Shown here piece after piece: positions 6,089-42,300 of a DNA stretch of 64,000 nt. Source of the stretch: Mytilus edulis (Eukaryota). The notes under the pieces were generated by a model, which saw only the letters and a list, made by a program, of their open reading frames with translations, did not search any database and was not told where the DNA came from. How positions within the stretch are numbered: position 1 is the stretch's first letter; each line of letters begins with the position of its first letter. The stretch is from NCBI RefSeq assembly GCF_963676685.1, contig NC_092344.1, positions 65,162,001 to 65,226,000 of the forward strand, written 5' to 3'. The position numbers were made by a program, and so were the translations under genes.

Positions 6089-6444
6089 GAAACAAATATG
6101 TTCCTAGAGCAATTCTACTCGATTTGGAACCAGGAACCATGGACTCAGTACGATCGGGTCCATTTGGGGAACTTTTTCGACCTGACAACTACATATTTGG
6201 TCAGTCAGGAGCTGGAAACAACTGGGCCAAAGGTCATTACACGGAAGGAGCCGAATTGGTAGATACTGTCATGGATGTCATCCGAAGAGAGACGGAAACA
6301 TGCGATTGTCTACAAGGTTTCCAGATGGCGCATTCTTTGGGTGGAGGAACGGGATCTGGCATGGGAACATTATTGATCAGTAAAATCCGTGAAGAATATC
6401 CCGACAGGATAATGAACACATTTTCTGTGATGCCATCGCCAAAG
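6089..6444 (+). CDS. TUBB: Beta-tubulin coding exon ([24 protein letters not shown]...GGGTGSG...SVMPSPK)
   Basis: ttatag acceptor whose phase 1 matches the previous exon; aag|gtaata donor; contains the tubulin signature GGGTGSG. Confidence 0.97.
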
Positions 6445-6646
6445 GTAATAAACATGTATAATATTTTAGATTCTCTCGTGCAAACTAACAATGCCGCGGC
6501 AAACAATAGTTCACTAAACACAATATAGAAAAGTAAAGACCGAGCAACATGAACTAAAAAACTATGGATGATCTCAAGTGATTCGATAAGAAAGCAGATC
6601 CTGCTGAACATATTGCACGCGCCGTGTTGCTCATGGAAGTAAAAAC

Positions 6647-7050
6647 CTTACTTACTTTTTATTACTGCCCTTGTACGTCATAAGCGTGTAGGGCAGTAAC
6701 GACGATTTTCCACTTTTTTTTGGCCATTGGCAGTTATCTGTAATGTACCTCATGTCTGTTGATGTTTACTAGCTTCTTTCTCAACAGTTCTTCTCCATGT
6801 CATTATGGGTCTTCTTCTTATTTTACCTTCTGGGTCTAGGTGAGTGCTGTTTTTGTGATGTCCTTCTTGTCTTTTCGAAGGACATGTCCAAACAAACCAA
6901 AGCGTGTTTTCATTATAGATGTGGCTATATCTTGTTGTTTGCATCTGATAAGAAGGATCTCGTTTGATTTTTTTGTGGCCAAAAGATTCGCAACTCCTTC
7001 TCAGAGTTTTGGTATGGAATACAGACAGCTTTTACAAACATGGTTATACG
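6647..7050 (-). mobile_element. RTE-clade LINE 3' fragment (degenerate) in a tubulin intron
   Basis: The minus strand encodes GHVLRKDKKDITKTALT*T, then (after a frameshift) PEGKIRRRPIMTWRRTVEKE, the typical RTE ORF C-terminus. Short (TAAG)n tail at ~6647-6656. Confidence 0.7.
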
Positions 7051-7151
7051 TAAATAAAATTGTTTAAGCATATGTGCTTAGACCTCAGTATCAGAGCAAA
7101 CCAACTAAACAAAAGAAGAACATGTCTTAATAAAGATTACCCATCGATTAA

Positions 7152-8132
<981 letters not shown>

Positions 8133-18510: not shown

Positions 18511-20343
18511 ATAATTATACATACAACTTGTTGAGATAGATAGGCATACATGTATGGACTAAGCTGACAACCCTGCCATGTTTAAACAAAGCAGAAGTCA
18601 AATTGTAAAGCATACTGTCATTAATTTGTGGATAAGAACACATGTTTTTGATATGTCGCTTCTAAATTTATGAAAGATATCATAGTTAGTTTAATGAATT
18701 TCTACTAACGTCGATAAAACATAAAGCAAATAGTAAAATTAAAACCGATCTTTTAGTGGTTGTTGTTGCTTTATAAAATTGAGAATGGAAATGGGGAATG
18801 TGTCAAAGAGACAACAACCCGACAAGAGAGCAGATAACAGTCGGAGGCCATCAACGGTTTAGTATCATACCATCATAAAATATATGAGAAGGCCATAACC
18901 TGTAGCATGCCAACAACTGGTTTTAAAATATGTCATATTTGTTTTTTGTACAATAAATTGTTTTGTTATAAATTTTAGACTGTTTCTTTTCTCAATTGTT
19001 TCATGTCTTGGCCTTTTATAGCCCACTATACGGTATAGGGTTTTCTTATTGTTGAAGGTCATATTGTTCTCTATAATTACTTACATCCAGTTATTTCGTG
19101 TCATTTTCATATCTCACTACATCTCTTTTTATATATTAACCAAGAGAAACACACTTTTTGCAATCGAGATTGACTTTCGTTCCCTCAGCGGTATTCGGAA
19201 TCAACCAGCTGTGTTATAGTGGCATGACCAACTGAACTATGTCAAGTGCCTAAAACAACCGGCCAAGTAGTTATTTTTTTTAAATTTTAATAGGCAATGA
19301 TAGAAAAAAGAACTTCACTAGTCTGGTAAAGTGTTCTCATCGGCTTAAAGAGGGTGTAATTACTGGGTTAACGAAATAATAATAATAATAAAAAAACAAT
19401 GAGTAAAACATAAAGAACAGAGAAAAATTGGCCGAAAAAAGATCAGAGAAAATAGGGTGCTAGTGGAAACTGGGGGCTGGCTTTATTCAGATTAGTATAT
19501 CTTTGTCATTCGTTTCTATTGCAATACAATAAAGAATATAAAGGATAAGTGTGGCATATCGGCAATGTCAGAGCGAGATTTTCAATCCATTAGCATAAGG
19601 TCTTAACCACCTAACTATGATCATATGAAGATAACAAGTCATTAAAATGTTTTAATGTTTTAAAACTTTATTACAAATCATTAGAATATACGAGTTGCAT
19701 TTGAGATATAATGTTTATGTACATTTGTATCGATACAATAATCGAGTCAAACATCTCTCAAACATCTCTCTCTATCTCCCAGACACACAAACACTCAAAC
19801 ACACACAAACGAAAAACACACATACACAAACACTCTTATGAGTACAAATATAACAATATAAATCGCTCGGAAAAAATGATTAGATTTCATATTCTATCTA
19901 TTAATTTGAGTTTATAAAATTGTAAATAAATGAAGTAAAAACGTGTATGAATGCATTCTTTTGAAGAGAAAATAGTTGAATGCTTAATTCAAATAAAAAA
20001 TGGAAATCATAATTAAATGTAGATAAAAGCATTGTAACGGAAAAGGCACTCTACTGTTTCCATAAAACCAAAAACATACGATAAACTGAGTAAAGATTGT
20101 CAGCGGATCATGTAAACGGTGAGCTGCCTGCAGCAGAACTTTAATTCTTACTCCTTTAAAACAAGTTTTATATACAATTGCGCTATGGGACTTTTGGGTG
20201 AAGCTTATGTCGCCCTATACATTGTGTATTGTCTGATTTCATCAGATTCAGTATCTAACAGTTCACTCACATTAATTTCCTTTATTAATTAATCACATCA
20301 AATCTTTGAGCTTTTGTGAGAAAAATATTGAACAAATTCGTCC

Positions 20344-21467
20344 TCAAAGTGTTTTTGTTCTTTCGGTGAAAGAAGACGTATTAAGAACTTTCTCCGTGGC
20401 GACCTCAGCGATTCGTCCACTCTCATATGACACTGGCTGTCTAATGTTTTCATTGATATCATCACTATTTAGAATACATGTAGTACATTGAGTATGACAT
20501 TTCGAAGGTATTTGTTCTAGAAATTCGTTGCTAACTTCTTGATTGAAAATACATGTCTGACAACTATTAACATTGTGTATACTCCCATAATGCTTCGACA
20601 AGCTGCCATTTTCTGACACAACAATATTGAAGCCGTTCGATTTCTTTCTCCTCTCGCTAGAAGTTCTGCACACATCCGGTATTGAATGTATCTTCGTCGA
20701 TCCAGTACCAAAATGGTTTTCCGGATGCAAATTTAAACTGTTGCCCTTTTCATTCAGTTGATTTTGAAAATGTTGCTTTTGTATTAAGCCTTTTGAATTA
20801 TTGTGTCGAATATCCACATGTTTACGAGGTAATAAAGGATTCAAATCTTTATTAATCAATGGCGAAACGGAAGATGGACTAGGTGTCACAGGACTTGATA
20901 TACCAGAGTCACTTGAGCAAGCACGATTGAGTTTTCTAAAATTATCGGATGAGATATTCAATCGGAACGGATTTCGTAGTAACGTCCGGATTCGTTTTGA
21001 GCTTTGATGATGCGACAAGTAATCATCGGAACTGACCGAGTCGCACGGTTGAATCGAGACATGGCTGTTGTAGCTCGATGAAATACTATCACTACATGAT
21101 GAAATATCTGTTGACTTACTCTCTGAAGAACTTATTGAACTTATGTGTTCCGAGGAAGAACTTGTTTGCTTTTTAGGCATTGAAAGCTTTAGTTGCTTCC
21201 AGAACTTTTCTAGCTTTTTGGAATCAGATTCGCCTGGCCATTCAATGTACGTAACACTACTTAATATAGCCTTTAAGTTCTTGTCAATTTTCAAGTTCGA
21301 TATTTCCTCAAGTATAACTGGAATTATTCTATGTTTCATTTTTAACATTTCATGTTGTGCTTTCTGATATTCAAGTCGACACCATTCACTCTCAATATAA
21401 CTCTTTGAAATAACCATGATTGTTCTCCTGCTATCTTCAACAGCTCTGATGATATTGTTTGCAATTA
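20344..21467 (-). CDS. EGF-TM-TIR receptor, last exon: C-terminal part of TIR (IANNIIRAVEDSRRTIMVISKSYIESEWCRLE...FWKQL) plus Ser-rich tail
   Basis: ttttttccag acceptor in phase 1, matching the upstream TIR exon. WCxxE and box-3 FW motifs present. Open to TGA at 20346-20344. Confidence 0.92.
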
Positions 21468-24343
21468 CTGGAAAAAAGGAGAAACTCATATAAGAAAATC
21501 GTACTAAAGTTTTATTTATGTTTATATAACTATATATATGTATGTGCTTCTGTGTATGACTTTGTAGTTGGATTTGCTTATTTACTTCGGAATATATAGA
21601 TTGTTTTTTGTGCGATTCCATTCGAACGTTATATTTAAAAGCGTGTAATTGCTCACTATTTAGTGAAAATAGCCCCAAAGTACATGTATATGGATAATGC
21701 CCTTATACTTTTTTTTGTTACTGAAAATTTCTATTTAGAATATTTAACAATTATTGTTATATTTGTTCAAATATTCATTCTTTAAATGTTTTAGCCTTGC
21801 TTAATATAGTATGTGTACTTATAATTTAGACTAAATATTCAGATTGTTTACGGAATGTATACAATTTCGTATGCTTCGGTGTTTAATATATGTGTATTCA
21901 AACTGTGTAGTAACTGCAGAAATTATATTAAGTATGCAAAACATTGATCGTATAAATTAGAATCTTATTTTTGCGTGGATGAATATCAAGTTGTTTGGGT
22001 TTACTAGGTCGTCTGCTTCATGTTCAAATTTGTATAATCTCTAAACAAATGTACTGTCTTACGTAATCACATAAATAAATAGTCACGGATGTATTTTTTA
22101 ATTGGTAATAAGCATCAGACACAAAAAGCTCAGAAAGTTCTGCAGGAATGGATTTTATATTCCGTATTATACAATGTTCTAATAAAAGTAGGGTTTCAAA
22201 AATCCACCATCTCAGAAATGTATATAAGCATGCAATATAATTATTTAAAGGGCATTAGCTACGAAAATAACAAAACATCAATTAAAATATGATTTTTTTT
22301 TTGTTTCAAACATTTATTTAAAAAAAAGGAATATACAATTACTTTTCGCTTTTAAAGCAATTAGTTCAGTTAAATTTCGTGGAAATAAACAACACTTTTA
22401 TAATTGGTGCTTGTGTTATATTGGTGTTCCACTATTTCGGGTTATGTGGAGGGTTGGGCACCTGCTTACATGTTTTACCCCTCCACATTGTATGTGTGCC
22501 TGTACCAAGTCAGGAGCTTGTGATTGAGCGGTTGTTCCGTGTTGCTGTGATACATATTTTTTTTTCGTTCATTTATTTTTTGGCGGTCAGTTTTCTCGTT
22601 TGAATTTTTTTACATTTGACATTTTGGGGCCTTTTATATCTGACTATGTAATATGGTCTTTGCTCATTGTTGAAGGCAGTACGGTGACCTTTAGTTTTAA
22701 ATTTCCATGTCATTTGGTCTTTTGTGAAGAATTGTCTCATTGGCGATTATGCCACATCTTCTTTTTATACATACATGTAAAGCGATGATAGTATATAACT
22801 TGAAATGAAAGAGAAATAGAAAAAAAATCTTATTTTCCGATTACATGTGCATGACTATTTATTTTATATAAGCATGGGAAGTCATCAGTCTTCAGAGGTC
22901 ATCTCTATATATAATTTGATAGCGAATGGTCTAAAATACTCACGAAATAATGATTTAATATAAAAAATGCCTCTGTTGTTAATTGTTTCTTTAAGGCATA
23001 ATAATCAATTGAATATACGTTTTAGTATGTTATAAATCATATATGAGAATTTGGGTCATCGTCAAACATGAATTTGTCAGTTAATGCCCCTTTAATGTTA
23101 CAATCAACTCACGAAGTCCTTTTACTTGTAAAACCGTAAAAAGTGTTAAATTTGAACTCGCTTCTGGAAAATTTAAATTGAGATTATTTACTAGTTTACA
23201 GTATGCATAAATTTGTAGCTTTTTCACCTATAAGTGAAGTTTTTATTCAAATTAAACAAATTAACAGTGCACCGAGTACTGGTGACAGTTTACATGTATG
23301 TTAACTTATGCATGTAATTAACGGTCTTTTGGTGCTTTGGCGTTGACTTAAAAAAATAAGCACTCAATATAAAAGATAAGTTGCTTGCAAGTAAAAAATT
23401 TATGTTGCCAGTGTTCACGGAATTGGTGTCACTCACAAGGATGACAAAATCCGAAAGTTTGTTGAATGTTGATGAAACCTATCCGACTTTGAATATTGTA
23501 GATTGTTTACACTCACATTACTATTTAAAACAAATGATATCAAAATTATCATATTTTTTATCCGTGGTATACACTGCTGTTAGAGAGAATTTGAAAATCA
23601 ATAATTATGGCAATTGTAAATGAATTAATTTGAATTTGTGAGAGAAAAAAATCCAACATATTAAATTACAAGCTAGTAAATATAAATTTGATTAATACTC
23701 TTCATGTTTATTTTTGGCCCCGGAATGAGCATCCGAATTATTTCATGATTGAAGTTTTTAGCATTAAACATTTTGTGTTTCGACTTTTTGTTCTAAAATT
23801 AAAACATGGTTAAAACAATTTATTGGAGTGGTACTCTACTTAAAGATTTAGAAAATTGGCTTATTTGAATTCTAAGTAATAGCGCGCGATTATTTCAAAA
23901 CACCACATCTTCTTTGTTATTCATCTTGAAACGGAACTAGAAAATACCCTAATCTCTTCTACATGTACTTAAGATATTACTAATTATCCTTTAGATATGT
24001 TACTGGGAATTCATCTAGAAAATGTCTGATGAATGATCGTTAGAGGATGGTCATTTGATATTCTAATAGAGACCAGGAGGAGTTTTTGGGCAGATTGACT
24101 ATTTATTTTCATTTGTTGCTATGCTAGCTTATTTGTTTCGCAGCATTGTTGTGCTATTCACTATTGTATTAAATATTTCCTGTTACAAAATTTTCATTTT
24201 CATCCTAGTATCTTTAAGTTTTCATATTTCTCCAGTCTTCCGCCTAGACAATCAGAATGATGGTCGCCCGCTCAAACACTATCATCAAAACAGTACAAAT
24301 AATTTATTATCGACATGATTACTATTTCAAATATGTAACTTAC

Positions 24344-24487
24344 CATCTCCTGGAGTAAAGTCCCTGAAGTGCAGACAAAGCTTGTATCCCATTTCTAGCT
24401 CTAGTTTCGGATACAACTGTTTCAATACGAAATCTTGATCTGTCTTTGAAGACTTGTATGAGATGAAAGCGTCATAACTTTTCCCAT
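24344..24487 (-). CDS. EGF-TM-TIR receptor, first TIR exon (D-GKSYDAFISYKSSKTDQDFVLKQLYPKLELEMGYKLCLHFRDFTPGD)
   Basis: ttatag acceptor, g|gtaagt donor, 144 bp, phase 1-1. Contains TIR box 1 (YDAFISY) and box 2/BB loop (LCLHFRDFTPG). Absent from the ORF track. Confidence 0.95.
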
Positions 24488-24572
24488 CTATAATAAAAAT
24501 TGTACAAAATATAAACTGTCAGCTATTTAGAACTAAGGAAGATATTACGCCTTTAGTATACACATGTAATGT

Positions 24573-24802
24573 ATGAGGGTATGAATGTAAAGGGGGAAAT
24601 GGGGGGTGGGGGCATGTCTGTGTTCTTTAACTTGTTTATGCCATTTTTGTCTATTCTTTATACTTTTTGCCCATTATTCTCTATTCTTTATATGTTTGCA
24701 CCTTATTATTATTTATTCTTTATTTATTTTGTCTAATTTCCCTATTCTTTATAATTTTTGCTAGATTATTGTTTATTTTGTAAAACCCTATCACACCCTC
24801 AT
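24573..24802. mobile_element. Short MITE-like element with atgagggt/accctcat ends and internal tattcttt sub-repeats
   Basis: Inverted 8-bp ends. A related copy in opposite orientation lies at ~28965-29278. Confidence 0.5.
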
Positions 24803-25176
24803 GTATACATCCATAGGTATTATAACATTAAATATTGGTTGTCTTATTTTTTCCCTCGATTTATGCAATTTGGTAATAACGATAGATTTTTGAAAGCCTC
24901 AGTCTATCAAGTCATAATGTTGAATTATAATTTTATCCTCTACTATACGAGTTATCTCCCCTTATTTGGCAAAGTTGAAAAAAATCAATCAAACAAAAAA
25001 TGTTGTGTTTTATAGACAATACAGCCGTTAATATGACAAAACACATAATTGTCTATATTAACATGAAGTCTTACACTTGAACTACATAGAAATTTGCATA
25101 TTTCATTAAAGATCTAGTTTTATCTTTTACTTCAAACTAGCTTCATTAATGACGATAACGTATTGTTAAACATATT

Positions 25177-25460
25177 CATACGCTTGAAACACGCGTTTAT
25201 TGTTTGGTTGCCATATGAATGACGTACACAACACGTGTACTTATAGTCGCACTTTAAAAAACACGACAGCATACGTTCATATTGTAGAAACAAGAGACTT
25301 GAGCGTTTAAATCGTTTGGTTGTCTTCTGAATGACGTATAACACACAACAAATCATGTCCTTTTATATACACTCTATAAAACGACATCATACGTTCATAC
25401 TCTCAAAACACATGTCTTGCTTAATTAAATCGTTTGAATGACGTATAAAACGAATGTACT
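25177..25460. repeat. Three degenerate ~100-115 bp tandem units
   Basis: Recurrent catacg...tcgttt(ggttg)...tgaatgacgta motifs. Confidence 0.6.
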
Positions 25461-26685
25461 ACTTTAATTCACAAACACACAAAAAAAAACTGCTTCCATA
25501 CGTTTATATGAAAGACAGTCTGTTACTAAACTGTACCTTCGTACTGACATTTGTGTTTGTTATCCAAAACGAATGTCAAGTTATAATCATATAAACCGCT
25601 GTAATTGTGAATTTTTAATTACTTAACAGGTACAATCAAATTGCATGATATATAAGCTAACCGCATCGATGAACTTGTGGTAACGTCTTCACTAATAGTA
25701 AGAGCAGGGGAGGTCGCGCGTTCGACCCTTGGTGAATAATACATTTGCTGGTTTATAAGCCAATCCCATGGTTATTGAAAGTAGGAGAGAAAAAATGGCA
25801 GGATGGGAATCAAAATAATATCTGCGTTGGAATACTTTGTCAAATCACAGACTTATTACATAAATAATAAAAATCCGCATGCCGTTTTTGTATGTAACAG
25901 GATAGATGAAAAATAAACATCACAAAATATTTTTTTTCATTTTGAATATCTTTGGAATATTGCTTGTTGAACGTGAATTAGAATCCTTTCATAACTTATA
26001 TAGCAAGCCTTAGTTATGTTTTCTCTTTTAATTGCCCCCCCCCCCCCCCAAATAGACTTTGAAATCAGAAGATGTGGTAGAATTTTCGAAGAGACAACTG
26101 TACAGCACAACATAAGAAAAAAAGGTAAAAATCAGCTAAAAATGGCTTTACACAAAAGATTGGTACGGAAAACATAAACAAAACAAACTTGCATAAAAAC
26201 AGAAGACACATAGTACTGTCTAGTAGTTACCTAACATTTAACTAGCTCAAAGCAAATTGCACCTTATATATAAATACCCGGAGTAATTAAAGCTTATTAC
26301 TATACGTAATTTCATGTATTTTTTTTGTCTGTATGTTGACCGATGGTTGTTCCTTTAAATTTGGACTTTCGTTGACAGTTGTGTCTTTGACTATCCTTGT
26401 TTTTGTAATTAACTATGCTTTCGGTTAAGTCATACACATACCTACATGGCTATGGTCTTAAGAAAAAAATCCACTCATACATTTTTTCATGAATATCTTT
26501 TATATATTTAAGTAAATTCTCTCAGTTTAAAATTTTAATTTTTAGTAAATATTAGTATTATAAAACAAGTTATCATATGATGTTATTTAATTGAAATAGA
26601 ATGCGAAACTTCCAGGCAAATTAATTTTTAAATGAAAAGGATAAAATGCAGAACTTCCAATATATTAGCATAACATTTAGCTTAC

Positions 26686-26844
26686 CATCATCTTCGTAAT
26701 GTTGAAAATAATGTAAAATCTTCATAACAAACAGTCTTCTCTTTTTCCAAATACAGTAAGGTAATATAACCATCAGGCCAATAAGGAGTGAACCTATGGC
26801 AACACACACCCCAGTCACGTACCAGTGGTACAGTATTTCGTCTT
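26686..26844 (-). CDS. EGF-TM-TIR receptor, transmembrane exon (E-DEILYHWYVTGVCVAIGSLLIGLMVILPYCIWKKRRLFVMKILHYFQHYEDD)
   Basis: tttttttcag acceptor, g|gtaagc donor, 159 bp, phase 1-1. A ~23-aa hydrophobic helix is followed by a KKRR stop-transfer cluster. Confidence 0.92.
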
Positions 26845-29800
26845 CTGAAAAAAAAGTTAAACAATATTGGTTTTGTATTTTTTCCCTAAATTTGTGTCCG
26901 CCATATTGGGATGATCGTAATTGCAGTTACGATCATCACGTTGACACCAGTGATTTTTTATTTATTATGGTATATGTTGACAGTTTGTTTCAACAAACTT
27001 GCAAGCATCGCTTTGTAAATTTACCAATCACAGAAACAAAATTCTACTGAGTAATATGTGAACTGAACTTAAACGTGTTTGTTCTTCTTTTAGTGTTTCT
27101 TTAATATGCATTAGCCCTACGGATTAAAAAGGTTATTCCACTTTTATAGGAGTCGTTTAGTATTTAAAGCCTCTTTCTGACTTATAAAGGTTCAAAGAAT
27201 TTTAGGTTAAATAGGTAAATTTTTCTTACTTTATTCTTTACAATTTTGATATAACTAAGAGGGTTTTTTTCTTTCAAGGGGGTTATTGAAGCATGCTTTA
27301 AGTTATCTCAACTGAACCTTCGTAAATGCTAGCTAGGACCGTCTAATGCTACCATCGGTCATTGCTGCTAAATTTAAATTTGTTACTTATGATGTTTTCG
27401 TGAAATATTGCTTTGTTTTATTGTCCTTTGTTTCCTTCTGGATTCGAAAGACGTGGGCTGTACTTTGAAATAATTCTTTTAAACTATGTGGTTCAAATTT
27501 CTTGAAATTTTTACTTTTTTTTCAAACGGTCAAAAGTTGTCAAACTTTAAGAAAATTAAACTAGCCAATTATGTTTCAAAGTGTTGGGTACCCATTTAAT
27601 TCAACGTACAAAGTAAGTTTACCAACTGTCACATTTTTATCTTAACAGGTTTATCATAGTTAAAGTACATAAGTACTTCATCAACTAAACTATCCTTAAA
27701 CTGAATATACTTTCATTAATTAAACTAAGCGAGTTGTCCCTTTTCATTATTTATCAATGTTCACCACAACTGGCATACAACATTTAGTTCTAATTGTTTT
27801 AACTGAAACTAGTATTTTTCATCTCTTTCAAATGTCAGCGAAAATGATAGATATAGAAAAGACATAGAAGTATTATTCAAAGTTACTGGTTATAAATTAA
27901 AAACACATTTTGTAACAACGGCTGTATTTTGCTTTTTTAGGTCATGTAGGAAATAAACATCGGTTTTACTTTCAAATTGTAAAAATAATATGGTTAGAAA
28001 TGGTTAGTTGGGAATTTATGTTTCTTCTGCTTTTTTACACGTTCATGTTATATATTGTGGAGAAATTGTGACTTTGATAGTGCTAAATGCAAAATGGTAG
28101 ACAAAAATGGTTAACCGTCACAAAAGACATGATAAGGGTTGGTAGTCAACTGGGGCATTTCTTTCTATTATACATAATTCGTTAGACTTTGTGACATAAA
28201 TAGTACCAATGAAAATTGGTGACAAAAATAGGGATTTGATTATAAACTGAGTGGATCGGGTGACTTAAAAAGTAAAATCATAAAAATACTGTGCTCCGTG
28301 GAAAATTCAAAAAGGAAAATGGCAAAATCAAAAGCTCAAACACATCAAACGAATGGATAACAACTGTCATATTGACTTAGAACAGGCATTTTCTTATGTA
28401 GAAAACGGTGTATTAAACCTGGTTTTATAGCTAGCTAAACCTCTCACTTTTATGACAGTCACATCAAATCCCATTAAATTGACAACGATGTGTGAATATA
28501 ACACACATACGTTTATGTTTGGCCTTATCATTATATGAAAACGTGCCTATTTGATCGAAAAATAACCTTAAAAACACATGCATCATTTCCACACGATATT
28601 TCTACTTGTAAATGTTAGTCATGAATGACGTTCAGGAAACTACATGGTATTATTATTACATAAATGCAAAAATAGCGCTTTGTCATGTTGATGAATTGTT
28701 TTTTTCAGAAGTTATCGTATAATTTATTGAACTTATATTTTCTATTTTATCTCCTTAATCTCGTTTATTATGATTTATTTCGAATTGGTAATAAATTTAA
28801 GTGTTTTAATCATTTCAGTGCATATTTAAATCGGATCCAACTAAAAACTAAATATGAATTTACCACACATTAATTAAAATGTCGGCATGTGATAACTACT
28901 TAACTTGAAATTTTTGCCTTTATTTTGATCCTATAAAAACAGATTCCCTTACAGTAACTGTACATGTATAAGGGTTTAGATGAGGGTTTTAAAAAAAATG
29001 ATAAAAATAATGGCCAAAAAATAAAGAGAATAGAAAGCCTTGAACCAAAAGGAAAAATAAAAGAGTATAATGAGGTACTACGATATAATCTATAAAAAAT
29101 AATGGGCAAAAGATTTAACGAATAGAGAAGAATGAACTGAAAAAAAAAGAAAAAGAATAACGAGGTGCTGAAATATATGGAATAGAAAATAATATACAAA
29201 GAATATAAATAATAGACAAAAATATTATAAAGAATTAAAAGATACAGAGATGAAAATCCCCCATCTAGATCCTCCTTAATTCCTTTTATTGTTAAACATG
29301 AACATGTGCAGAAAGTAGCCTATATGGATGGTATATTTTCATTTTTTTTTTTTACTTAATAAGCTTCTTGTTATTAAATTTTAAAATATCAAACTTTAAC
29401 TATTACGAATGGATAAAATTTACTATCAACAGGATATTGTGGTTGAATCTATAATTTCAAAATATGACATCTGGGAGTGGACAACCTTGTAGCAGAACGT
29501 ATGATATTATTTATGAAATATATCACCTGTTTTTATAGCACCTTACATTTCACAATTAGTATCAAGTAATAACAATCCAATGATGTAAAAGTAAGGGATT
29601 GAAATACAGCAACATAACGATACTAGCATACAAAACGATATCTAGGTCAAATTCATTTATCTAAACGAAAAGGAGTCTATACAAAATACACTGCTGTCGA
29701 AAGTCTAAAAAAAGTTGTAAATACATTAAACAGAAACTATATGCTATGAACAGCAAGTTCTCCATACAAAAAAACATGGAGTTATGACATAGGACATATC

Positions 29801-30040
29801 AATGCATACGTAAATGCATGTTTATAGTATGTTCCTATTGTATATTCATGTATTGACAATTGTTCATTTCAACTGCTCAAGGAGAACTTATGTTAAGGCG
29901 AGGTGTTTATGTCCTATAAGTTCGTATTAAAATGACATTCCTCGATAATATATTGTTTGTTTCGGTTATAACACACTTATATAATTTGTAGTGCAATTCT
30001 TATGTTTATTTTGTTTATTGATATAAAAATACTGTGCAGA

Positions 30041-30265
30041 TAAATAAAGGCAACAGTAGTATACCGCTGTTCAAATCTCATAAATCAATGGACAAAAAAC
30101 AAAATAGGGGTAACAAACTAAAACCGAGGGAAACGCATTAAATATAAGAGGAGAACAACGACACTACACTAAAATGTAACACACACAGAAACGGACCAAG
30201 CATCAGACAAAATCCCACGAGAATAACAAATATAACATCAAAACCAAATACATGAATTTGGAAGT
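30041..30265 (+). repeat. Dispersed repeat copy (aaataaaggcaacagtagtataccgctgttcaaa family)
   Basis: Similar sequence at ~9495-9640 and, inverted, at ~34470-34565. Confidence 0.65.
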
Positions 30266-30337
30266 ATTCCAATTGTATCATATACCCTTTCTTGACGAAG
30301 TGTCTAATAATACAAGTGAGGATCATATATTACCTAC

Positions 30338-31151
30338 CATTTGGAGCAACTATTTTGGTTGTACAGTAGGGTCCAGTGAAATCAGAATCGCACTTGCATT
30401 TAGAGGTGCCATTTATTTTGTCAATTATTTTACAGCTCCCATGCAGTCCACAATCTCTCGTACATCTTTCATCACAAAAGGAACCAGTATAGCCAAATTC
30501 ACAAAGACAAAAAAAACTCTTCCGTTTCCCTTCTGATTTAGTTTTTGGTTCAATTTTTATGCACACACCCCGTTCACATGTCAAGCCTCCACCACAATTG
30601 GAATTTAAATCAGAGCAAGTATAATTATAACTCTCTATGTAACTTTCAACACATTTCCCTCCATTTTGACAAGTATTGCGACATTCATTCCATAACGTTT
30701 GTCGACTTTGAAAGTTTTCGGGATTGTTATGAATTGTTGCATTTCCTTCAGATGTTTCGTTGTATCGGTTTGGATCGGTTACTGGTACAAATAACCGATC
30801 CGTGAAAGAGCTGTTCGGAACTCTGTCATCTTGTTTTGTAGCAGTATGGCGACGGCGAGACATGAAATGATCACTTGACCTAGTATGATTTTTTATGTCA
30901 TCTATTTCGATGTCACACCATCTTCCAGTAGTATTCACAGGACAAACACAGCTTGCAAAACATGTACGACTATCCAAGACACAATGTCCACGGTTACAAT
31001 TTGTAAAAACACAAAAGTCTAAACAATTTTTTCGAGGCGGTCGAAATTCGGGTTTTCCAACAGATCGTATACGAATAATTGAAGAATTTGTTATATCAAT
31101 ATAAATAATAATCGCATATACTACATGCAGCCAAGAACAATAAATAACCAT
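30338..31151 (-). CDS. EGF-TM-TIR receptor, first coding exon: signal peptide and Cys-rich ectodomain with 3 complete and 1 partial EGF-like repeats
   Basis: ATG at 31151 followed by hydrophobic MVIYCSWLHVVYAIIIYI. EGF C-terminal signatures CVCPVNTTGRWC, CLCEFGYTGSFC and CKCDSDFTGPYC; partial repeat CQNGGKC. The g|gtaggt donor is in phase with the TM exon. Confidence 0.88.
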
Positions 31152-32600
31152 GTCGGAACCTATCAACGCTACACATACTAACAGTCCATGAATAGTATAG
31201 TTCTACATGATATGTCTTTAAAAACTTAAATTATATAAAAACCTGATATAAACAGAACAACGAAAATAAATGTTTTTGTTGTATTTCACAATATCATAGA
31301 CTCCATTTTATGTTTTGAACTAACGAAAACATGTCGTTAAAAGTTCATATATAAGTTTTTCTCTAGCAAATTGAGAAATTTAAGACACAAAAGCTTATGT
31401 ACTATACTCCATATCAAGATCATGATTATTTCTTTCCATCCTCATCCAAAATTAAGATAATAAGTACTAATACAAACTCCGCGAAAAATAATTACAACTT
31501 CTTTTGTGTCAAAACAGAAAAAAGATATTATTTAGTAATAAAAAGTGAATACACAGTAGATTTGTCGTCATTTTACCTGTGGGTCATACTAATTTATCAT
31601 ACTTGACACATTGTGACGTGAACAGTTATATCGGAGCCTGATGTGGGCTCAACTATACTAATTGCACAATTCATCAACAAAAATTTCAGATTATTTTGCC
31701 GTTGGCAATTTACAGATTTAAGTGCATTTTCTATTTTGTTACGCAAAGAGTTTATTTACTTGGATTTTTTCTTAAATTTTTAATGTACGAAGCGATGAGG
31801 AGATAACTCATTTGCTTGACATCTTCTGAATATATTAAACTTTAAAACCGTACATAAATTTCACTTACGAAAGAACTTTTGAATATTTTAATTTTAATTT
31901 AATGTTTAGTTTTAACAGAATATAAAAACAATTATTCGAAAAATATCTTCATATAATGTTCATTGGTAAAGTAGTTGCTCGGACGGAGTTTGTTCTATTA
32001 CTTATAAAATATTTGAAGCCCAAAAAATGCCGGTTACCTATAAACGACAATTTTATATCTAGTTTCGCAGGTTAGCTGATATCGGAAATCTCTGGAAAGC
32101 TTGAAAAATTGTTTCAATTGTCAATGTGCATATTTTAAAATAAAGTTGTTCCTGTTTTGACAAGAAATTGATTATGTCGTCATAGTACAAAAATATAAAC
32201 TTATGTTACCACTAATTAATGGAGCTAGAATCTTAAAGGTGTGTGTATAGAATGATCAATTTTATTGTAATACTGGCTTATTCTAAAAGGATTTTTCAAT
32301 GTCATATTATTTTTCAATTTCATATCATTTTTCAATTACAAATTTTATTTGAATAATAGATTGAAAAAGCTATCTATATGTTGCTTTTCTGTAAATATTG
32401 ATAATGCATTTTCCCATAGGAACTCCCTTTACGGCTAAAACTGCCTAGAATGGAAAGTTCAGATGCACTACACTTTTTTTCAAAGGTCAAAATATAGGGC
32501 TATTCCTACCTCGACTGTATGGTTACCATAGATTTCAATATAAACAATATTTACATGTATATTTTCTGGTAACTTTCCTAAGTTATGTTTCTATGAGATG

Positions 32601-33733
32601 CAAAAGAGGGACGAACGATACCAGAGGGACAGTCAAACTCATAAATCGAAAATAAACTGACAACGCCATGGCTAAAAATGAAAAGGACAAACAGGCAAAC
32701 AATAGTACACATAACACAACATAGAAAACTAAAGAATAAACAACACGAACCCCACCAAAAACTAGGGGTGATCTCCGGTGCTCCGGAAGGGTAAGCAGAT
32801 CCTGCTCCACATGTGGCACCCGTCGTGTTGCTTATGAGATAACAAATCCGGTAAATAGTCTAATTCGGTAGGTCACATTTATGAAAGGGAAGGGGATTGT
32901 AGTTACGACGTAAGGAACATATCCGATATCATTTGTGAAACGGTTATTCCATAACGGTCAACCAACTCGTGATGGCGTCCGTAAAATTTACGAAGAGATG
33001 ATTTCAACTTCACCATTTGGAACTCTTGATTTAATAGCTTTCTTGTGAGCAACAACCCTCTATCAAGAAAATCATGATAGGAAATGCAAGCACGGGAATA
33101 TCGTATCAATTGGGAGATATATACCCCGTATGCAGGTGCTGCTGGAATGGTGCTACTTAGAAATGGAAAGTTCACAATTGGAAAGCTGAAATCATCTCTT
33201 TTGTCGTAAAGTTTTGTTTTCAATCGACCCTCATTGTCAATTTCTAGATGTAAGTCAAGATATGAGGCCGAGTGTATCTGTTGTATCCTTTATCTCTAGT
33301 TCAATGGGATAGATGCGTTCGACATAGTCACCAAATTTTGAATTATTTAGTGAAAGAACATAATCTATATAGCGGAAAGTAGAGTTAAAGGATATTGCTA
33401 ACTTTTATCTTTCTTCCTAATAAGTTTCTGTATAAAGTCAGCCCCATTATAATAAAGAAACAAGTCGGCAAGAAGAGGGGCACAATTCGTTCACATTAGA
33501 ATGACGATAGTCTGTTGAAAAACACGTCCTCCGAACGTAACAAATATGTTGTCAATCAAGAAATCAAGCATCTTGATAATGTCAGTTTCAGAGATTTTTT
33601 TGTTTGAATCAGAGTGATCCTTTACAAAGTAGGATGTATCCCTTCCGAAGACAAGATACTTGTATCTTCGTTGGCCATTCTTTTTTATGAAACAAAGCAA
33701 TACCAACTCTTTCAATTTGTCTTTTAGTTGCAA
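32601..33733 (-). mobile_element. 5'-truncated, inactivated Penelope-like retroelement (RT C-terminal half plus 3' repeat)
   Basis: DFLIDNIFVTFGGRVFQQT..M*TNCAPLLADLFL..FRYIDY..KLYDKRDDFSFPIVNFPFLSS..AYGVYISQLIRYSR. In-frame stop, frameshifts, and YIDD changed to YIDY. Confidence 0.85.
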
Positions 33734-36574: not shown

Positions 36575-37725
36575 AATAGATTATAAACTTACTGTTTACA
36601 AAATTTTGCATTTTTGAAATACTAAGGCTATCTACGTCAGCAATAGATTACCTAAGCTTTTTGACAGAATGTTAAGGAAGTTTTTGTCCTCAATACTCTT
36701 TAATTTCATACTTTATTTGGCTTTTTTACATTACGGATTCGAGCGTTACCGATGAGTCTTTTGTAGACAAAACGCGTGTTTCGCACTAATACATTTTTTT
36801 TTAAATCCTGGTATCTATGATGATGAGTGTGTTTTCCACGTACTGGGTCGATGCACTGCTGTTGGAGTTTATATTCCCCGAGAACATCACCAGCCTAGTA
36901 CGTAGCCCTTCTGTGTTGACATAAATTATCATTGATATGGTCATAATAATAAATTAACTGTTTACAAAACTTAGAATTTTCGACAAACTAAGGCTTTCTT
37001 CCTCAGGAATAGATTACCTTGGTTGTATTTGGCAAAACTTTTAAGATTTCTTTCTCCTCAATGCTCTTCAACTTCGTACATTATTTAGCCTTGTCAACTT
37101 TATTTGATTCAGGCGTCACTCATGAGTCTTTTGTAGACAACACGTTCGCCACGCGCTTATACAAATGTTTTAGTCCTGGTATATATGATGAGTGTATTTT
37201 CCATCTACTGGGTAGATACCACTTGCATTTTGAAGTTCTAAGACTTTCTTCCTCAGAAATACATTACCTTGGCTGTATTTGGAACAACGTTTAGGAAGTT
37301 TAATCCTAAATGCTCATCGACATCGTACTTTATTTGGCCTCTTTAACCTTATTTGATTCGAGCGTCACTTTTGAAAATAAAACGTTGAATCCTCGTATCT
37401 ATGACGAGTTTATTTACAACCACAGGGTTGATGGCACTGCTGGTTAAGTTTTTATTCCCCGCGGGTATGACCGGCCCAATAGTCAGCACTTCTGTGCTGA
37501 CATGAATTATCATTGATATGGTCATAATTATAAATTAACTGTTTAAAAAACTTTACTTTGTTTAAATACTTAGACTTTCTATCTGAGGTATAGATCAACT
37601 TGGCTGCATTTGGCCTTTTTAACTATTTTTGGGTCAATCATCACTGATGAAACTTTTGTAAATGAAACGCGCGTCTTGCGCTTATACATTCTTTTAATTC
37701 TGGTATCTATAATGAGTTTATTTAC
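36575..37725 (+). mobile_element. Degenerate tandem array of a ~370-bp monomer with hammerhead ribozyme cores (non-LTR retrozyme-like)
   Basis: Cores at ~36749, 37119, 37358 (deleted) and 37644. The cross-copy consensus CTGATGA-GTCT(TTTGT)AGAC-GAAA-CGCG is a hammerhead core. Spacing of the first two copies is 370 bp. Confidence 0.75.
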
Positions 37726-39310: not shown

Positions 39311-42300
39311 TGATAATTATTCAACAATGATGTAGTCATATAAGTATTACAAACCCTACAAAATATAACAAGATACATATTAAACACATTTATCTAAAAA
39401 TACTATATCATACTGTGTTACAGTTATTATAACATTACTGCAGATCAACATAATATCAGAACATTGAATGTTTATAGTTCTTATACAATATCTATACACA
39501 AGGTGACATGACATGCCTGATGATAATTAACACTTGCAAATATTCACTCATCGTTCATATAAAATCATCAGCCTTGACAATTTAACATACTACTATAATG
39601 TCAAGATCATATAACAAAGCACACTCTTTCATAAAGCTGGGAATCTTACCAAAATGAATGCAAGAAACATTCATTTCAAAGTTAAGGATCCAGTTAATCC
39701 AAGACACCTCAAAGAGTACAAAATGTAACTTACCATATAAAGTCATGATGTCCTGTTCCAGAATGAATTCCATCACTATACTAATCCATAGAACTTATGG
39801 AATTACTAATCAAACACAATATAAAGTCTATGAGCACAAAGTGCATCAAAACATACAAATATATCAGGATCACAACAAATACATCAATCCTCCATTACTG
39901 TTTTCAAAACTACCACCAAAACTGGGGGCAAGGCTTAATAAACCAATCAGAATACAAGAAAACCTATACACTCTAGTGAACAGTGAGTACTGATAGTAAA
40001 ATCAATAATAGGTAAATGCTACAAGGTAAACAGTTAGATTTTATGGATCAATGAATAATCAATAGGCAATCAATGGAATAAAGGTAAACTTAAGTAAACT
40101 GCTCTGCAAATGAAAGAATATAATGAATGGTGTCTCAGACTAACCTATAAAACATATAAAATATATAAATGATTAATATGATAAAAATCCACACTACCAC
40201 ATAACCAACAGAATATTTTATGGCTTATATAAAATCCAATTTATTTGAAAGAGAAATAGTCAAGTTTAAGCTGTTAGTATATTATTTTTCATTTCATACT
40301 AATAAAAGCTACGATATAGGTCCAAGGACACAATTATCGTCCTATGTTTTTCTTTGCATAAAAAAAGTTCCAATGACATTGGATTCCTTATATAAAATGG
40401 TTTGTTAGAAGCGATTTAGCAAAAAATGTTGAACAACATTTTAATAACCGAGGAACAAGTTGAAACAAGAGACCTAATTTTTAACTGTCTCTTGTTTAGA
40501 ATCAATTGTAAACATTGATTTATTAAAAAGTATTGCAAAATGATGCATGAGAAGATATTCAGGAAGTAATTTTAAAGAGAAAAAAAGGAATCATATCTAC
40601 ATATGTAACATATGGACACATGAAGCGGATTCAAACTTTAAGGTAGCCAGTGTAATGTGTAGTTCCTACTTGAAGTGGCTACATTTATCTTGTGCAAGTC
40701 TAAAACAACTTCCAAAGGCAAAAAAATGGTTTTTTAACAATTGCATATGTTACATCATATGTGTCCATTTGAAATTCGTAGCAAACAACTTTTAATATTG
40801 TCTGTTTTGTGATGCAGTTTTACATAGCAATATTTTTATCACAAGCAGTAGGATATTTAAACCATAGATTTTAATACACAGATTTGAAAATCGACTTTTT
40901 ATATAAATATGTTAGAAACAAATATATTTAATGATGTATATACAAATGTGTTTTTATGCTTTTAATAAATATTATAAAGCTATGCATTATTTATGTATGT
41001 ACATGTTCAATATCTTATTTTTGATTGTTCTGTATTTTCATTGCTTGGTATTGTGATAAATGATTTAAATTATTATTCAGCTTTTTTTTTTCTTTCTCTA
41101 TTAATAACATCAATCAACATTTTTATTCAGTGCCGGCAAAATGATTTTTTTTTATTTTGCCTGTGACGGCTATATCGCAAATTTTCTATTTTGCCGGTGC
41201 CGGTCAAATAGCCACTGCCATAAAAGTTTGGGTGCTGAATCTTTATGTTAAGTAGTGATTTGGTCCAGTTAACGGGGTTAAAATAGGTCAAATTTTATTA
41301 CGTCTGAAGCTGTCAAACTGAATTTTAGACTCCCTTAACACAGAATTGTCAATATTTTGAGTTAGAGCTGGTAGAAGTGTCTTTAATTTAGATATTATTT
41401 GTGCCACTAGTAGTGCATTACACTGTAAAAATCTTTTTGAGATAGAGCAGGTGCGATTCTTTCAATTTGAATTCATTGTCTAAAAGAAATACACTACAAA
41501 ATAACTGTGTTCTCGAGGCATATACTTGGTCGTTATTTGTTTGACGAAAGGTTAAAACAAAAAGTGTCGAGGTACTGAGGTCGTATCTTAAAATTTACAT
41601 TTCATTCTGTAATTTGTATTTTAGAATATGTATTCACTGTACATTGGATTTTTGAAAATAATCTACAGTTAGAACAATAGACTTACAGCAGAGAAATGTA
41701 TTCACATCTGATCTGTAATTTTGTGTTTTTTTTTCCATTTATTGAACAGTTATCTCATGGAGTTTAGTTATTTTCTAATATATAATTTCAGTGTTGTATA
41801 ACAGGGATATAGGACGAGCTTTGTCGTGACTCATAAACTAGGGAATAAACAACAAAGCCCCAATTGGAAGTCCACATATTATATTTACATTTGAATTCAT
41901 ATATATCAACATTTAATGTGCAAAGCAAATTAAATATCAAATTACAAAACAATCAAGTCAACTCTGGTATTGGTCCTTATACATAAACTCGACGTCCGAA
42001 CTTGGATCTCGTCGGATTTTACTTAGAATATATGTTGTGACTGTCAATGTTTAAATATATAACCCCGTATTTTAAAGCACTCAAATTTTATTCACCGATA
42101 AATGTTTAGGGAATAGAATAGAAAGACAATTACGTCATCTCTATAATATTTTTCAACTTATGGTTTTAAAACCTATCAATTGTAACCATAATATAACAGA
42201 TACATAGATAAATAATAAACAATCCATAAAGGTTGAATAAGCGTGACACCGGGACGGGTCCGTATTGCATAACATATAAATAAGGAATTTGACACGTGAA

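What the first reader, a model, noticed from the sequence alone, without database searches (positions are those of the whole stretch)
20344..31151. Intact single-pass receptor coupling an EGF-repeat ectodomain to a TIR domain
Seen: four exons with canonical, phase-compatible (all phase 1) splice sites join into an uninterrupted 746-aa protein: signal peptide, EGF-like repeats, TM, KKRR, complete TIR (boxes 1-3) and a ~275-aa tail. Established: well-studied animal TIR receptors use LRR (TLR) or Ig (IL-1R) ectodomains. I recall EGF-TIR architectures being noted in comparative surveys of bivalve TIR proteins, but I know of no ligand or pathway assigned to them. Inference: a receptor class that links EGF-type protein contacts (cell-cell, matrix, wound or allorecognition cues) to MyD88/NF-kB-type signalling.
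Basis: partly seen in the sequence, partly recalled or inferred. Interest (0 to 1): 0.8.

Follow-up and report, generated by a model that had tools for sequence, protein, structure and literature searches.

The report
Annotated mussel EGF-TIR receptor gene
This is a real, expressed blue-mussel gene for a membrane receptor with EGF-type outer modules and a Toll-type TIR signalling domain, but the gene is already annotated, its protein class was named years ago, and its ligand and pathway are still unknown.

Summary
Four minus-strand exons (31151-30338, 26844-26686, 24487-24344, 21467-20344) have GT/AG borders, all in phase 1. Each exon peptide is an exact substring of RefSeq XP_071128102.1 (Mytilus edulis, 746 aa, "uncharacterized protein isoform X1"). 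Intron-less contigs from four independent studies carry the EGF-to-TM joint (two runs) and the TM-to-TIR joint (three runs, plus a shifted alignment in the fourth).

The protein has a signal helix, an EGF-like module, a disordered glycosylated linker, an EGF cluster, a TM helix and a Toll-type TIR with boxes 1-3. A roughly 270-aa disordered tail follows.

The gene is not new. Orthologues are annotated in five Mytilus species. The family occurs in bivalves, gastropods, cephalopods and one annelid. "EGF-TIR" is a named class in the oyster (2015) and Aplysia (2022) immune-gene surveys, and no function is assigned in either survey.

MyD88/NF-kB signalling is a reasonable inference but is untested.

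Additions made here:
- An annotated isoform starts at an upstream alternative first exon (39773-39734). It skips the EGF exon and adds no LRR or Ig domain.
- A TIR-less EGF-TM partial duplicate lies about 1 Mb away.
- The ectodomain evolves faster than the cytoplasmic part.

The exons were never joined for any search.

The parts
39734..39773 (-). Alternative first coding exon of the annotated isoform X2 (peptide MEFILEQDIMTLY, donor G|GTAAGT, phase 1). It is joined to exon 2 and gives a TM-TIR protein of 488 aa with no ectodomain.
   Evidence: The N-terminus of P0268 (XP_071128107.1) was located in the window by six-frame search. The sequence was read. Read support for this joint was not examined.
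30338..31151 (-). Exon 1: start codon plus the whole ectodomain (271 codons and 1 base).
   Evidence: Exact match to P0273 residues 1-271. Transcript contigs cover it and join 30338 to 26844.
31080..31151 (-). Probable signal peptide (about residues 1-24, hydrophobic helix 2-22).
   Evidence: Hydropathy. AlphaFold helix 2-22. The N-terminus is shared with the orthologues P0070, P0271 and P0270. No SignalP was run.
30915..31025 (-). N-terminal EGF-like cysteine module (C43-C79).
   Evidence: C47, C52, C57, C64, C68, C70 and C79 are at least 90% conserved in 20 homologues. Beta-hairpins at 56-82 in the model. Aligns with Lottia P0022 residues 73-104.
30693..30914 (-). Disordered linker carrying N-glycosylation sequons (about residues 80-153).
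   Evidence: pLDDT below 50 for residues 90-147. Four of the ectodomain's eight N-x-S/T sequons lie here. Its length varies among homologues.
30363..30683 (-). Membrane-proximal EGF-like cluster (C157-C263). The last two modules are canonical six-cysteine EGFs.
   Evidence: Invariant C192, C197, C215, C217, C226, C230, C234, C240, C252, C254 and C263. Pfam EGF_TEN E 8e-6, below the cut-off. Foldseek best matches are Notch1 EGF11-13 and EGF4-7.
26686..26844 (-). Exon 2: stalk, TM helix, KKRR stop-transfer and the conserved juxtamembrane motif KILHYFQHYEDD.
   Evidence: Joints to exon 1 and exon 3 are seen in contigs. Aligns with Lottia P0022 residues 365-410.
26747..26824 (-). Transmembrane segment (WYVTGVCVAIGSLLIGLMVILPYCIW).
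   Evidence: Kyte-Doolittle 2.58 over 19 residues. One continuous helix 272-315 in the model of the orthologue.
24344..24487 (-). Exon 3: first part of the TIR domain, with box 1 (YDAFISY) and box 2 / BB loop (LHFRDFTPGD).
   Evidence: Pfam TIR profile positions 2-42, 22.5 bits against a cut-off of 21.3. Sequence.
21148..21467 (-). Exon 4, first part: remainder of the TIR domain, including box 3 (KFWKQL).
   Evidence: Pfam TIR profile positions 45-169, E 1.4e-13. Best PDB matches are the TIRs of TLR1, 6, 10 and 2. pLDDT 80-91 in the orthologue model.
20344..21147 (-). Exon 4, second part: Ser/Thr-rich cytoplasmic tail of about 270 aa, plus the TGA stop.
   Evidence: 26% Ser+Thr. No Pfam hit. 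Predicted disordered, pLDDT about 30. Short islands are conserved among bivalves: RNPFRLNI, IPDVC and two CxxC pairs.

Best explanation
Window 20344-31151 (minus strand), plus an alternative first exon at 39773-39734, is the Mytilus edulis chromosome-1 gene already annotated as XP_071128102.1 and XP_071128107.1. It belongs to the lophotrochozoan 'EGF-TIR' family.

Shown here:
- It encodes a type I single-pass membrane protein. In order: signal helix, an N-terminal EGF-like module, a disordered glycosylated linker, a membrane-proximal EGF cluster, a TM helix, a family-invariant acidic juxtamembrane motif, a Toll-type TIR domain with boxes 1-3 and the BB-loop proline, and a disordered Ser-rich tail with short motifs conserved in bivalves.

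Inferred:
- It works like a Toll or IL-1 receptor whose sensor is made of EGF modules instead of LRR or Ig. A protein ligand, or a cell or matrix contact, would cluster the ectodomains. That would bring the cytoplasmic TIR domains together, so that they nucleate TIR adaptors (the mussel MyD88 paralogues) and the IRAK/TRAF6/NF-kB cascade.
- The disordered tail would add regulation by phosphorylation or turnover.
- The ectodomain-less isoform X2 and the TIR-less paralogue could tune signalling.

Confidence is about 0.97 for the gene, its architecture and family membership. It is about 0.5 for the activating MyD88-type mechanism. The figure given below is the compromise for the whole statement.
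For: Gene model:
- Splice sites and phases.
- Each exon peptide is an exact substring of P0273.
- Orthologues of 739-748 aa are colinear in four other Mytilus species.

Transcription:
- Intron-skipping contigs from four independent studies, with zero depth in the unique intron sequence.
- No intron-less genomic copy in the own genome.

Domains:
- TIR in Pfam. Nearest solved TIRs are TLR1/6/10/2, then SIGIRR and IL1RAPL. Outside the family, the next-best proteins are a crinoid Ig-TIR and then Toll/Tollo-type LRR receptors.
- EGF fold and conserved cysteines. Pfam EGF hits above the cut-off in family members.
- TM, KKRR and eight ectodomain N-glycosylation sequons. Full-length orthologue model.

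Family breadth:
- Bivalves, gastropods, cephalopods and the annelid Owenia.
- 41 representatives (clusters at 50% identity) at E<=1e-30.
- The paralogue at C1:120.95 Mb has the same four-exon layout.

Pathway and evolution:
- MyD88, IRAK4 and TRAF6 are present in M. edulis (PMC3308963).
- The ectodomain diverges 9-24% between Mytilus species, against 0-8% for the TM, TIR and tail exons. This fits a ligand-facing surface, or a loosely constrained linker.
Against: - No ligand, adaptor or output was tested, and none is reported in the papers found.
- The runs used are only guessed to be RNA. They carry no tissue or challenge labels, so an immune context is not shown.
- Pfam EGF hits in this particular protein are below the curated cut-offs.
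- The signal peptide lacks a basic n-region and was not scored by a dedicated predictor.
- A long C-terminal extension after the TIR also marks inhibitory or non-immune TIR receptors (SIGIRR, IL1RAPL, Drosophila Toll). SIGIRR is among the better PDB matches.
- Junction e3/e4 has no direct read evidence here.
Confidence: 0.6

Rival explanations
1. It is a negative regulator or decoy-type TIR receptor, working like SIGIRR/TIR8. It would sequester MyD88-type adaptors or TLR TIR domains and dampen signalling. The long tail would contribute to the inhibition.
For: - A tail of about 270 aa follows the TIR, as in SIGIRR and the inhibitory C-terminal extension of Drosophila Toll (my own knowledge).
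- SIGIRR is among the PDB matches at E 1.5e-9.
- The locus and its surroundings produce truncated forms, which are typical of regulatory circuits: isoform X2 without an ectodomain and a TIR-less paralogue.
Against: - Boxes 1-3 and the BB-loop RDFxPG proline are intact and nearly invariant across the family.
- TLR1/6/10/2 score better than SIGIRR.
- The residue changes that mark SIGIRR were not mapped here.
Confidence: 0.2
2. It is mainly a developmental, neuronal or adhesion receptor rather than a pathogen or damage sensor, comparable to Toll-6/7/8 or IL1RAPL1. It would read EGF-type cell-cell or matrix contacts, and the disordered tail would act as a scaffold.
For: - EGF arrays are typical of cell-cell and matrix recognition, and the best structural matches are Notch and Delta EGF arrays.
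- The orthologues found here (Mytilus, Lottia) show little copy-number expansion. The massively expanded mussel TLRs contrast with this: more than 110 TIR exons in the genome but only three places matching the ectodomain exon (this gene, its partial duplicate, and one weaker match near the paralogue cluster at C1:121.02 Mb).
- The tail holds short conserved motifs.
Against: - The ectodomain evolves three to five times faster than the rest between Mytilus species. That is unusual for a conserved developmental ligand pair, though much of the change may sit in the linker.
- No expression data by tissue or stage were available.
Confidence: 0.2
3. The four exons do not form one gene, so the EGF exon and the TM/TIR exons belong to different transcripts and the model is an artefact.
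For: - It starts at an internal Met and uses another donor inside exon 1.
- Isoform X2 skips exon 1.
Against: - Contigs from two independent runs join 30338 to 26844 exactly.
- RefSeq models in five Mytilus species give the same protein.
- Lottia, scallop and clam homologues are colinear over the whole length.
Confidence: 0.01

Closest known systems
Molluscan 'EGF-TIR' proteins. The class is listed for Crassostrea gigas (Zhang et al. 2015, PMC4346834) and Aplysia californica (2022, PMC9334734). RefSeq entries include XP_071128102.1 (M. edulis), XP_052079026.1 (M. californianus) and LOTGIDRAFT_166958 (Lottia).
   Same: The same gene and family. It has EGF-like modules, a TM helix, the invariant juxtamembrane motif HYFQxYEDDDGK, a Toll-type TIR, and the same four-exon phase-1 layout in the paralogue examined.
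   Different: Nothing essential differs. Bivalve orthologues have a long disordered tail that the limpet orthologues lack. The number of EGF modules varies between subfamilies.
Toll / Toll-like receptors (LRR-TM-TIR).
   Same: Single-pass type I topology. The TIR has boxes 1-3 and the BB-loop proline. By sequence it is the nearest TIR type. It presumably uses the same adaptors.
   Different: There is no LRR in any reading, and the ectodomain is built of EGF modules. The TIR is split by a phase-1 intron after box 2. A disordered tail of about 270 aa follows the TIR.
IL-1 receptor family, including SIGIRR and IL1RAPL1/2 (Ig-TM-TIR with a C-terminal extension).
   Same: A non-LRR ectodomain on a TM-TIR cassette, an intron-split TIR, and a C-terminal extension after the TIR. 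Truncated and decoy-like forms exist (isoform X2, the TIR-less paralogue).
   Different: There are no Ig domains, and the TIR scores lower against these proteins than against TLR1/6/10/2.
TLR-like TM-TIR proteins without LRRs in early-branching animals, mentioned in PMC10279657. An example is Hydra HyTRR (PDB 4w8g/4w8h, a weak hit).
   Same: Isoform X2 (a 13-aa stub, then TM and TIR) has this architecture. It suggests that a partner could supply recognition.
   Different: The main isoform carries its own EGF ectodomain of about 250 aa.
Draper / CED-1 / MEGF10 / PEAR1 EGF-repeat receptors. NCBI's automatic names for several family members point to them.
   Same: Single-pass receptors whose ectodomain consists of teneurin/MEGF-type EGF repeats.
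   Different: Their cytoplasmic parts signal through NPxY or ITAM-type motifs, not through a TIR domain. The resemblance is limited to the EGF repeats.

Membership tests
TIR domain (Pfam PF01582) | A profile match above the curated cut-off that covers the domain, with boxes 1, 2 and 3. | tested here: met
   Exon 3 scores 22.5 bits (profile positions 2-42) and exon 4 scores 51.5 bits (positions 45-169), against a cut-off of 21.3. Box 1 is YDAFISY, box 2 is RDFTPG and box 3 is FW. The orthologue model has a TIR fold with pLDDT 80-91.
EGF-like domain | A Pfam EGF-family match above the curated cut-off. | tested here: not met
   In this protein EGF_TEN scores 26 bits against 65, EGF_Teneurin 17.2 against 24.3, EGF 16.3 against 21.5 and EGF_2 16.3 against 22.1. 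Family members P0026 and P0028 do pass, and 26 of the 65 nearest representatives hit EGF_TEN at E<=0.001.
EGF-like domain | A six-cysteine pattern and a two-hairpin EGF fold. | tested here: met
   The cysteines of the two membrane-proximal modules are invariant in 20 homologues. The AlphaFold model has pLDDT 70-88 there. Its best PDB matches are Notch1 EGF11-13 and EGF4-7, Pfs25 and DLK1 (E 8e-5, prob up to 0.97).
Molluscan EGF-TIR class | EGF-type ectodomain, TM helix and TIR in one polypeptide. | tested here: met
   Transcript contigs join the EGF exon to the TM exon and the TM exon to the TIR exon. Each exon peptide matches RefSeq isoform X1 exactly. Members from Lottia, Haliotis, scallops and Owenia are colinear.
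Toll-like receptor | A leucine-rich-repeat ectodomain. | tested here: not met
   No LRR family hits exon 1 at E<=1 or the full-length family members scanned (P0022, P0026, P0028, P0034, P0027). No other long minus-strand ORF lies upstream in the window. The only annotated upstream exon encodes 13 residues.
IL-1 receptor family | An immunoglobulin-domain ectodomain. | tested here: not met
   There are no Ig hits. Ig-TIR proteins appear only as more distant TIR relatives.
MyD88-dependent signalling receptor (functional class) | Ligand-induced TIR-TIR recruitment of MyD88 and activation of NF-kB. | not testable with these tools
   Only the preconditions were seen: an intact BB loop, and MyD88, IRAK4 and TRAF6 transcripts in M. 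edulis (PMC3308963).

The most novel reading that the evidence does not exclude
The EGF-TIR locus may be a self-regulating receptor module that is conserved from annelids to molluscs as a third class of TIR receptor beside the LRR and Ig classes.

Under this reading:
- The full-length form senses an endogenous protein ligand or a cell or matrix contact.
- An alternative promoter makes an ectodomain-less TM-TIR form.
- A nearby partial duplicate makes a TIR-less EGF-TM decoy.
- In paralogues, skipping the phase-1 TM exon would release soluble forms.

This would parallel the receptor, decoy and soluble-receptor logic of the vertebrate IL-1 system, and it would have evolved independently.
Probability: 0.15. 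Interest if true: 0.6.

Novelty: already known. Interest (0 to 1): 0.3.

Why it matters
Molluscs have very large TIR repertoires, and almost all functional work concerns the LRR-type TLRs. EGF-TIR receptors are conserved across molluscs and reach at least one annelid, yet no paper found here assigns them a ligand, an adaptor or a phenotype.

This report does not reveal a new kind of gene. It supplies a verified model, with isoforms, a decoy-like paralogue and a family alignment, for anyone who wants to test what a non-LRR, non-Ig TIR receptor senses.

Tried and rejected
- Joined model. All searches were made exon by exon, or with natural database proteins of other species. P0273, which equals the joined model, was only compared exon by exon as exact substrings and was never used as a query.
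- Read evidence. The single read-laying run covered 24413-30412 (6000 letters), so it could not test the e3/e4 joint, the X2 joint 39734/26844, or the internal donor of the older model P0001. No N stretches were met.
- Run labels. All runs are labelled 'RNA? (a guess)'. I accept them as transcript-derived because their contigs skip introns at exact GT..AG borders, and because the genome holds no intron-less copy.
- Rfam. No matches over 19000-33000.
- Tail. It has no Pfam family and no folded module in AlphaFold. The idea that the conserved CxxC pairs form a zinc knuckle is therefore unsupported. A DSGISS string that resembles a beta-TrCP degron is confined to mytilids, and I did not pursue it.
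- Partial duplicate. I searched 57 kb downstream of it for TIR exons and found none.
- Literature. Searches for a functional study of EGF-TIR proteins found only lists. The bivalve TIR survey by Gerdol et al. 2017 is not held, so what I recall of it is not used as evidence.
- Not attempted. No TIR phylogeny with outgroups and no dN/dS, because coding DNA of the orthologues was not at hand.

Full report
**The sequence**

The region lies in a 32% G+C animal genome of 1.37 Gb. On the minus strand I read four exons: 31151-30338, 26844-26686, 24487-24344 and 21467-20344. The donors are AATG|GTAGGT, GATG|GTAAGC and GATG|GTAAGT, and the acceptors follow polypyrimidine tracts. Exon lengths are 814, 159, 144 and 1124 nt. 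An in-frame stop lies 17 codons upstream of the ATG. Only eight ORFs of 110 aa or more exist in the whole window, and two of them are exons 1 and 4. Chance is not a serious alternative.

**How I handled the spliced model**

Every search used single exon peptides or natural database proteins from other species. The identity of the whole model was settled differently. A cluster look-up of a public hit returned XP_071128102.1 (P0273), 'uncharacterized protein [Mytilus edulis] isoform X1'. It has 746 aa and sits on a contig of 126,317,657 bases, which is the length of this window's contig. Each exon peptide is an exact substring of it, at 1-271, 273-324, 326-372 and 374-746. Colinear orthologues of 739-748 aa are annotated in M. 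galloprovincialis, M. trossulus, M. californianus and M. coruscus.

**Transcript evidence**

Eighteen runs hold 7-10% of the sampled words of the locus, roughly the exon share. I laid four of them, from four different studies, on 24413-30412.
- Contigs join 26844 to 30338 in runs X1 and X7.
- Contigs join 24487 to 26686 in X1, X2 and X3. X7 shows the same joint shifted, as 24488/26688 with one letter between.
- The skipped pieces have CT..AC ends on the + strand, which is GT..AG on the gene strand.
- Unique intron sequence has zero depth. The deep bins at 28317-28373 and 30040-30260 are high-copy repeats.

The runs are only guessed to be RNA. However, the genome has no intron-less copy of these exons, so the joined contigs must come from spliced RNA. 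Three things support it: the Pfam TIR profile runs from positions 2-42 in exon 3 to 45-169 in exon 4; all public models agree; and the contigs are long enough to include exon 4.

**Domains**

- TIR. It is above Pfam's cut-off in both exons. It carries box 1 (YDAFISY), box 2 with the BB-loop proline (RDFTPG) and box 3 (FW).
- Nearest TIR relatives. The nearest solved TIRs are TLR1, TLR6, TLR10 and TLR2 (E about 1e-12), followed by SIGIRR and IL1RAPL. Outside its own family, the next-best proteins are a crinoid Ig-TIR and then arthropod and amphioxus Toll/Tollo.
- Membrane anchor. Exon 2 holds a strong TM segment followed by KKRR.
- Ectodomain. Exon 1 gives only sub-threshold Pfam EGF hits. Against that, its cysteines are invariant or nearly so across 20 homologues. 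An AlphaFold model built with those homologues shows EGF hairpins at 56-82 and 166-254 and a disordered stretch at 90-147. The model's best PDB matches are all tandem EGF arrays: Notch1 EGF11-13 and EGF4-7, Pfs25 and DLK1. Family members pass Pfam's EGF cut-offs.
- Topology. Eight N-x-S/T sequons lie in the ectodomain. The N-terminus is a hydrophobic helix shared with the orthologues. I take it as a signal peptide, though I had no dedicated predictor.
- Whole protein. A model of the full-length M. californianus orthologue shows one continuous helix through the TM and juxtamembrane region, a confident TIR fold, and a disordered tail from about residue 468.
- Tail. It is 26% Ser+Thr. A few short islands are conserved among bivalves (RNPFRLNI, IPDVC, two CxxC pairs). 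The limpet orthologues lack it.

**The family**

Exon 4, and then the Lottia and Owenia proteins, recover dozens of proteins with the same layout. They share a strikingly invariant juxtamembrane motif, HYFQxYEDDDGKxYDAF. The members come from bivalves, gastropods, cephalopods (Octopus, Argonauta) and one annelid (Owenia fusiformis). No other phylum appeared.

An exhaustive HMMER search of 1.84 billion representatives gives 41 at E<=1e-30. I took 65 nearest representatives with at least 180 residues before the TIR, leaving out seven members already known. Among these 65:
- 26 hit EGF_TEN;
- 10 hit Ig_3;
- 7 hit HYR;
- 6 hit LRR_8;
- 2 hit cadherin.

The TM-TIR cassette therefore seems to have been combined with several ectodomain types. 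In this genome, the paralogue at C1:120.95 Mb has the same four-exon layout.

**The literature**

'EGF-TIR' is a named category in the oyster immune-gene survey of 2015 (PMC4346834). [quoted passage not shown] I found no paper giving a ligand, an adaptor or a phenotype.

1. RefSeq isoform X2 (XP_071128107.1, 488 aa) starts at an alternative first coding exon at 39773-39734. That exon has a phase-1 donor G|GTAAGT and joins exon 2. The product is a TM-TIR protein with a 13-residue stub instead of the EGF ectodomain.

2. An older public model (CAG2220059.1, 573 aa) starts at an internal Met and uses a phase-1 donor inside exon 1. That removes the last two EGF modules. The donor at 30338 is the one seen in contigs. 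The internal one lay outside the stretch I could lay.

3. A partial duplicate lies about 1 Mb away, at C1:64,225,622-64,228,560. It copies the promoter region, exon 1, intron 1 and exon 2 at 72-88% nucleotide identity. Its ectodomain ORF is open, at 245 aa. It has a stop codon right after the TM (…YIWKRRRLFV*). No TIR exons follow within 57 kb. It is a TIR-less EGF-TM copy, either a decoy or a decaying duplicate. Its expression was not tested.

4. In paralogues, annotated isoforms skip the phase-1 TM exon in frame (P0095). P0098, an M. edulis isoform X2 of another paralogue, also lacks a TM segment, judging from its sequence.

5. Between Mytilus species the ectodomain exon differs by 9-24%, and the other three exons by 0-8%.

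**How it most likely works**

The shown parts are the transcript, the topology elements and an intact Toll-type TIR. M. edulis has MyD88, IRAK4 and TRAF6 (PMC3308963). From what is established for Toll and IL-1 receptors, the simplest mechanism is as follows. Ligand or contact clusters the EGF ectodomains. That pairs the TIR domains, which recruit MyD88-type adaptors and start the IRAK/TRAF6/NF-kB cascade. I give this about even odds.

Two rivals each deserve about one chance in five. The first is an inhibitory, SIGIRR-like role, suggested by the long tail and the truncated forms. The second is a mainly developmental or adhesive role, suggested by the EGF arrays and by the low copy number of the ectodomain exon (three matching places in the genome) compared with the expanded mussel TLRs. 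None of these can be separated with sequence tools.

**Verdict**

The gene, its family and the class name are already public. I rate it 'already known' and score it low. It remains useful as a verified entry point into an unstudied receptor class.

Noticed in passing
G000:C1:64225622-64228560 (+), held as L015:1622-4560: A partial duplicate of this gene, about 0.97 Mb away. The promoter region, exon 1, intron 1 and exon 2 are copied at 72-88% nucleotide identity. The ectodomain ORF is intact (245 aa). A TAG stop follows directly after the TM segment, and no TIR exons lie within 57 kb downstream. It is a TIR-less EGF-TM copy, either a decoy candidate or a decaying duplicate.
   Followed up: partly
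window 39734-39773 (-): Alternative first coding exon of RefSeq isoform X2 (XP_071128107.1). It bypasses the EGF exon and yields a 488-aa TM-TIR protein with a 13-residue outer stub. Read support was not examined.
   Followed up: partly
window about 30573 (-), inside exon 1: The older public model CAG2220059.1 (573 aa) uses a phase-1 donor inside exon 1 (…GGGLTCER|). This drops the last two EGF modules in frame. It may be a minor splice form or a prediction artefact.
   Followed up: no
L006/L007 (G000:C1:120949946-120957384, +): A paralogous EGF-TIR gene, orthologue of M. trossulus LOC134697051, with the same four-exon layout. The M. californianus orthologue has an annotated isoform (P0095) that skips the TM exon in frame. 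That isoform would place a TIR domain in the secretory pathway.
   Followed up: partly
window 28317-28373 and 30040-30260 (intron 1): Short high-copy repeats with very high summed contig depth (hundreds to thousands) in all four runs, and with many loose ends. They are probably transposon fragments transcribed elsewhere in the genome.
   Followed up: no
window 6124-8132 (+): Two long ORFs with typical beta-tubulin sequence ([10 protein letters not shown]…, acidic C-terminus). A beta-tubulin gene lies next to the receptor gene.
   Followed up: no
proteins of alignment A3: Among the nearest TIR relatives in public data, some carry HYR (7 of 65) or cadherin (2 of 65) domains before the TIR. These are other unusual ectodomains on the same kind of TM-TIR cassette.
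   Followed up: no
window 36575-37725: The hammerhead-ribozyme array noted by another first-stage finding lies inside the first intron of isoform X2, between the exons at 39.7 kb and 26.8 kb.
   Followed up: no
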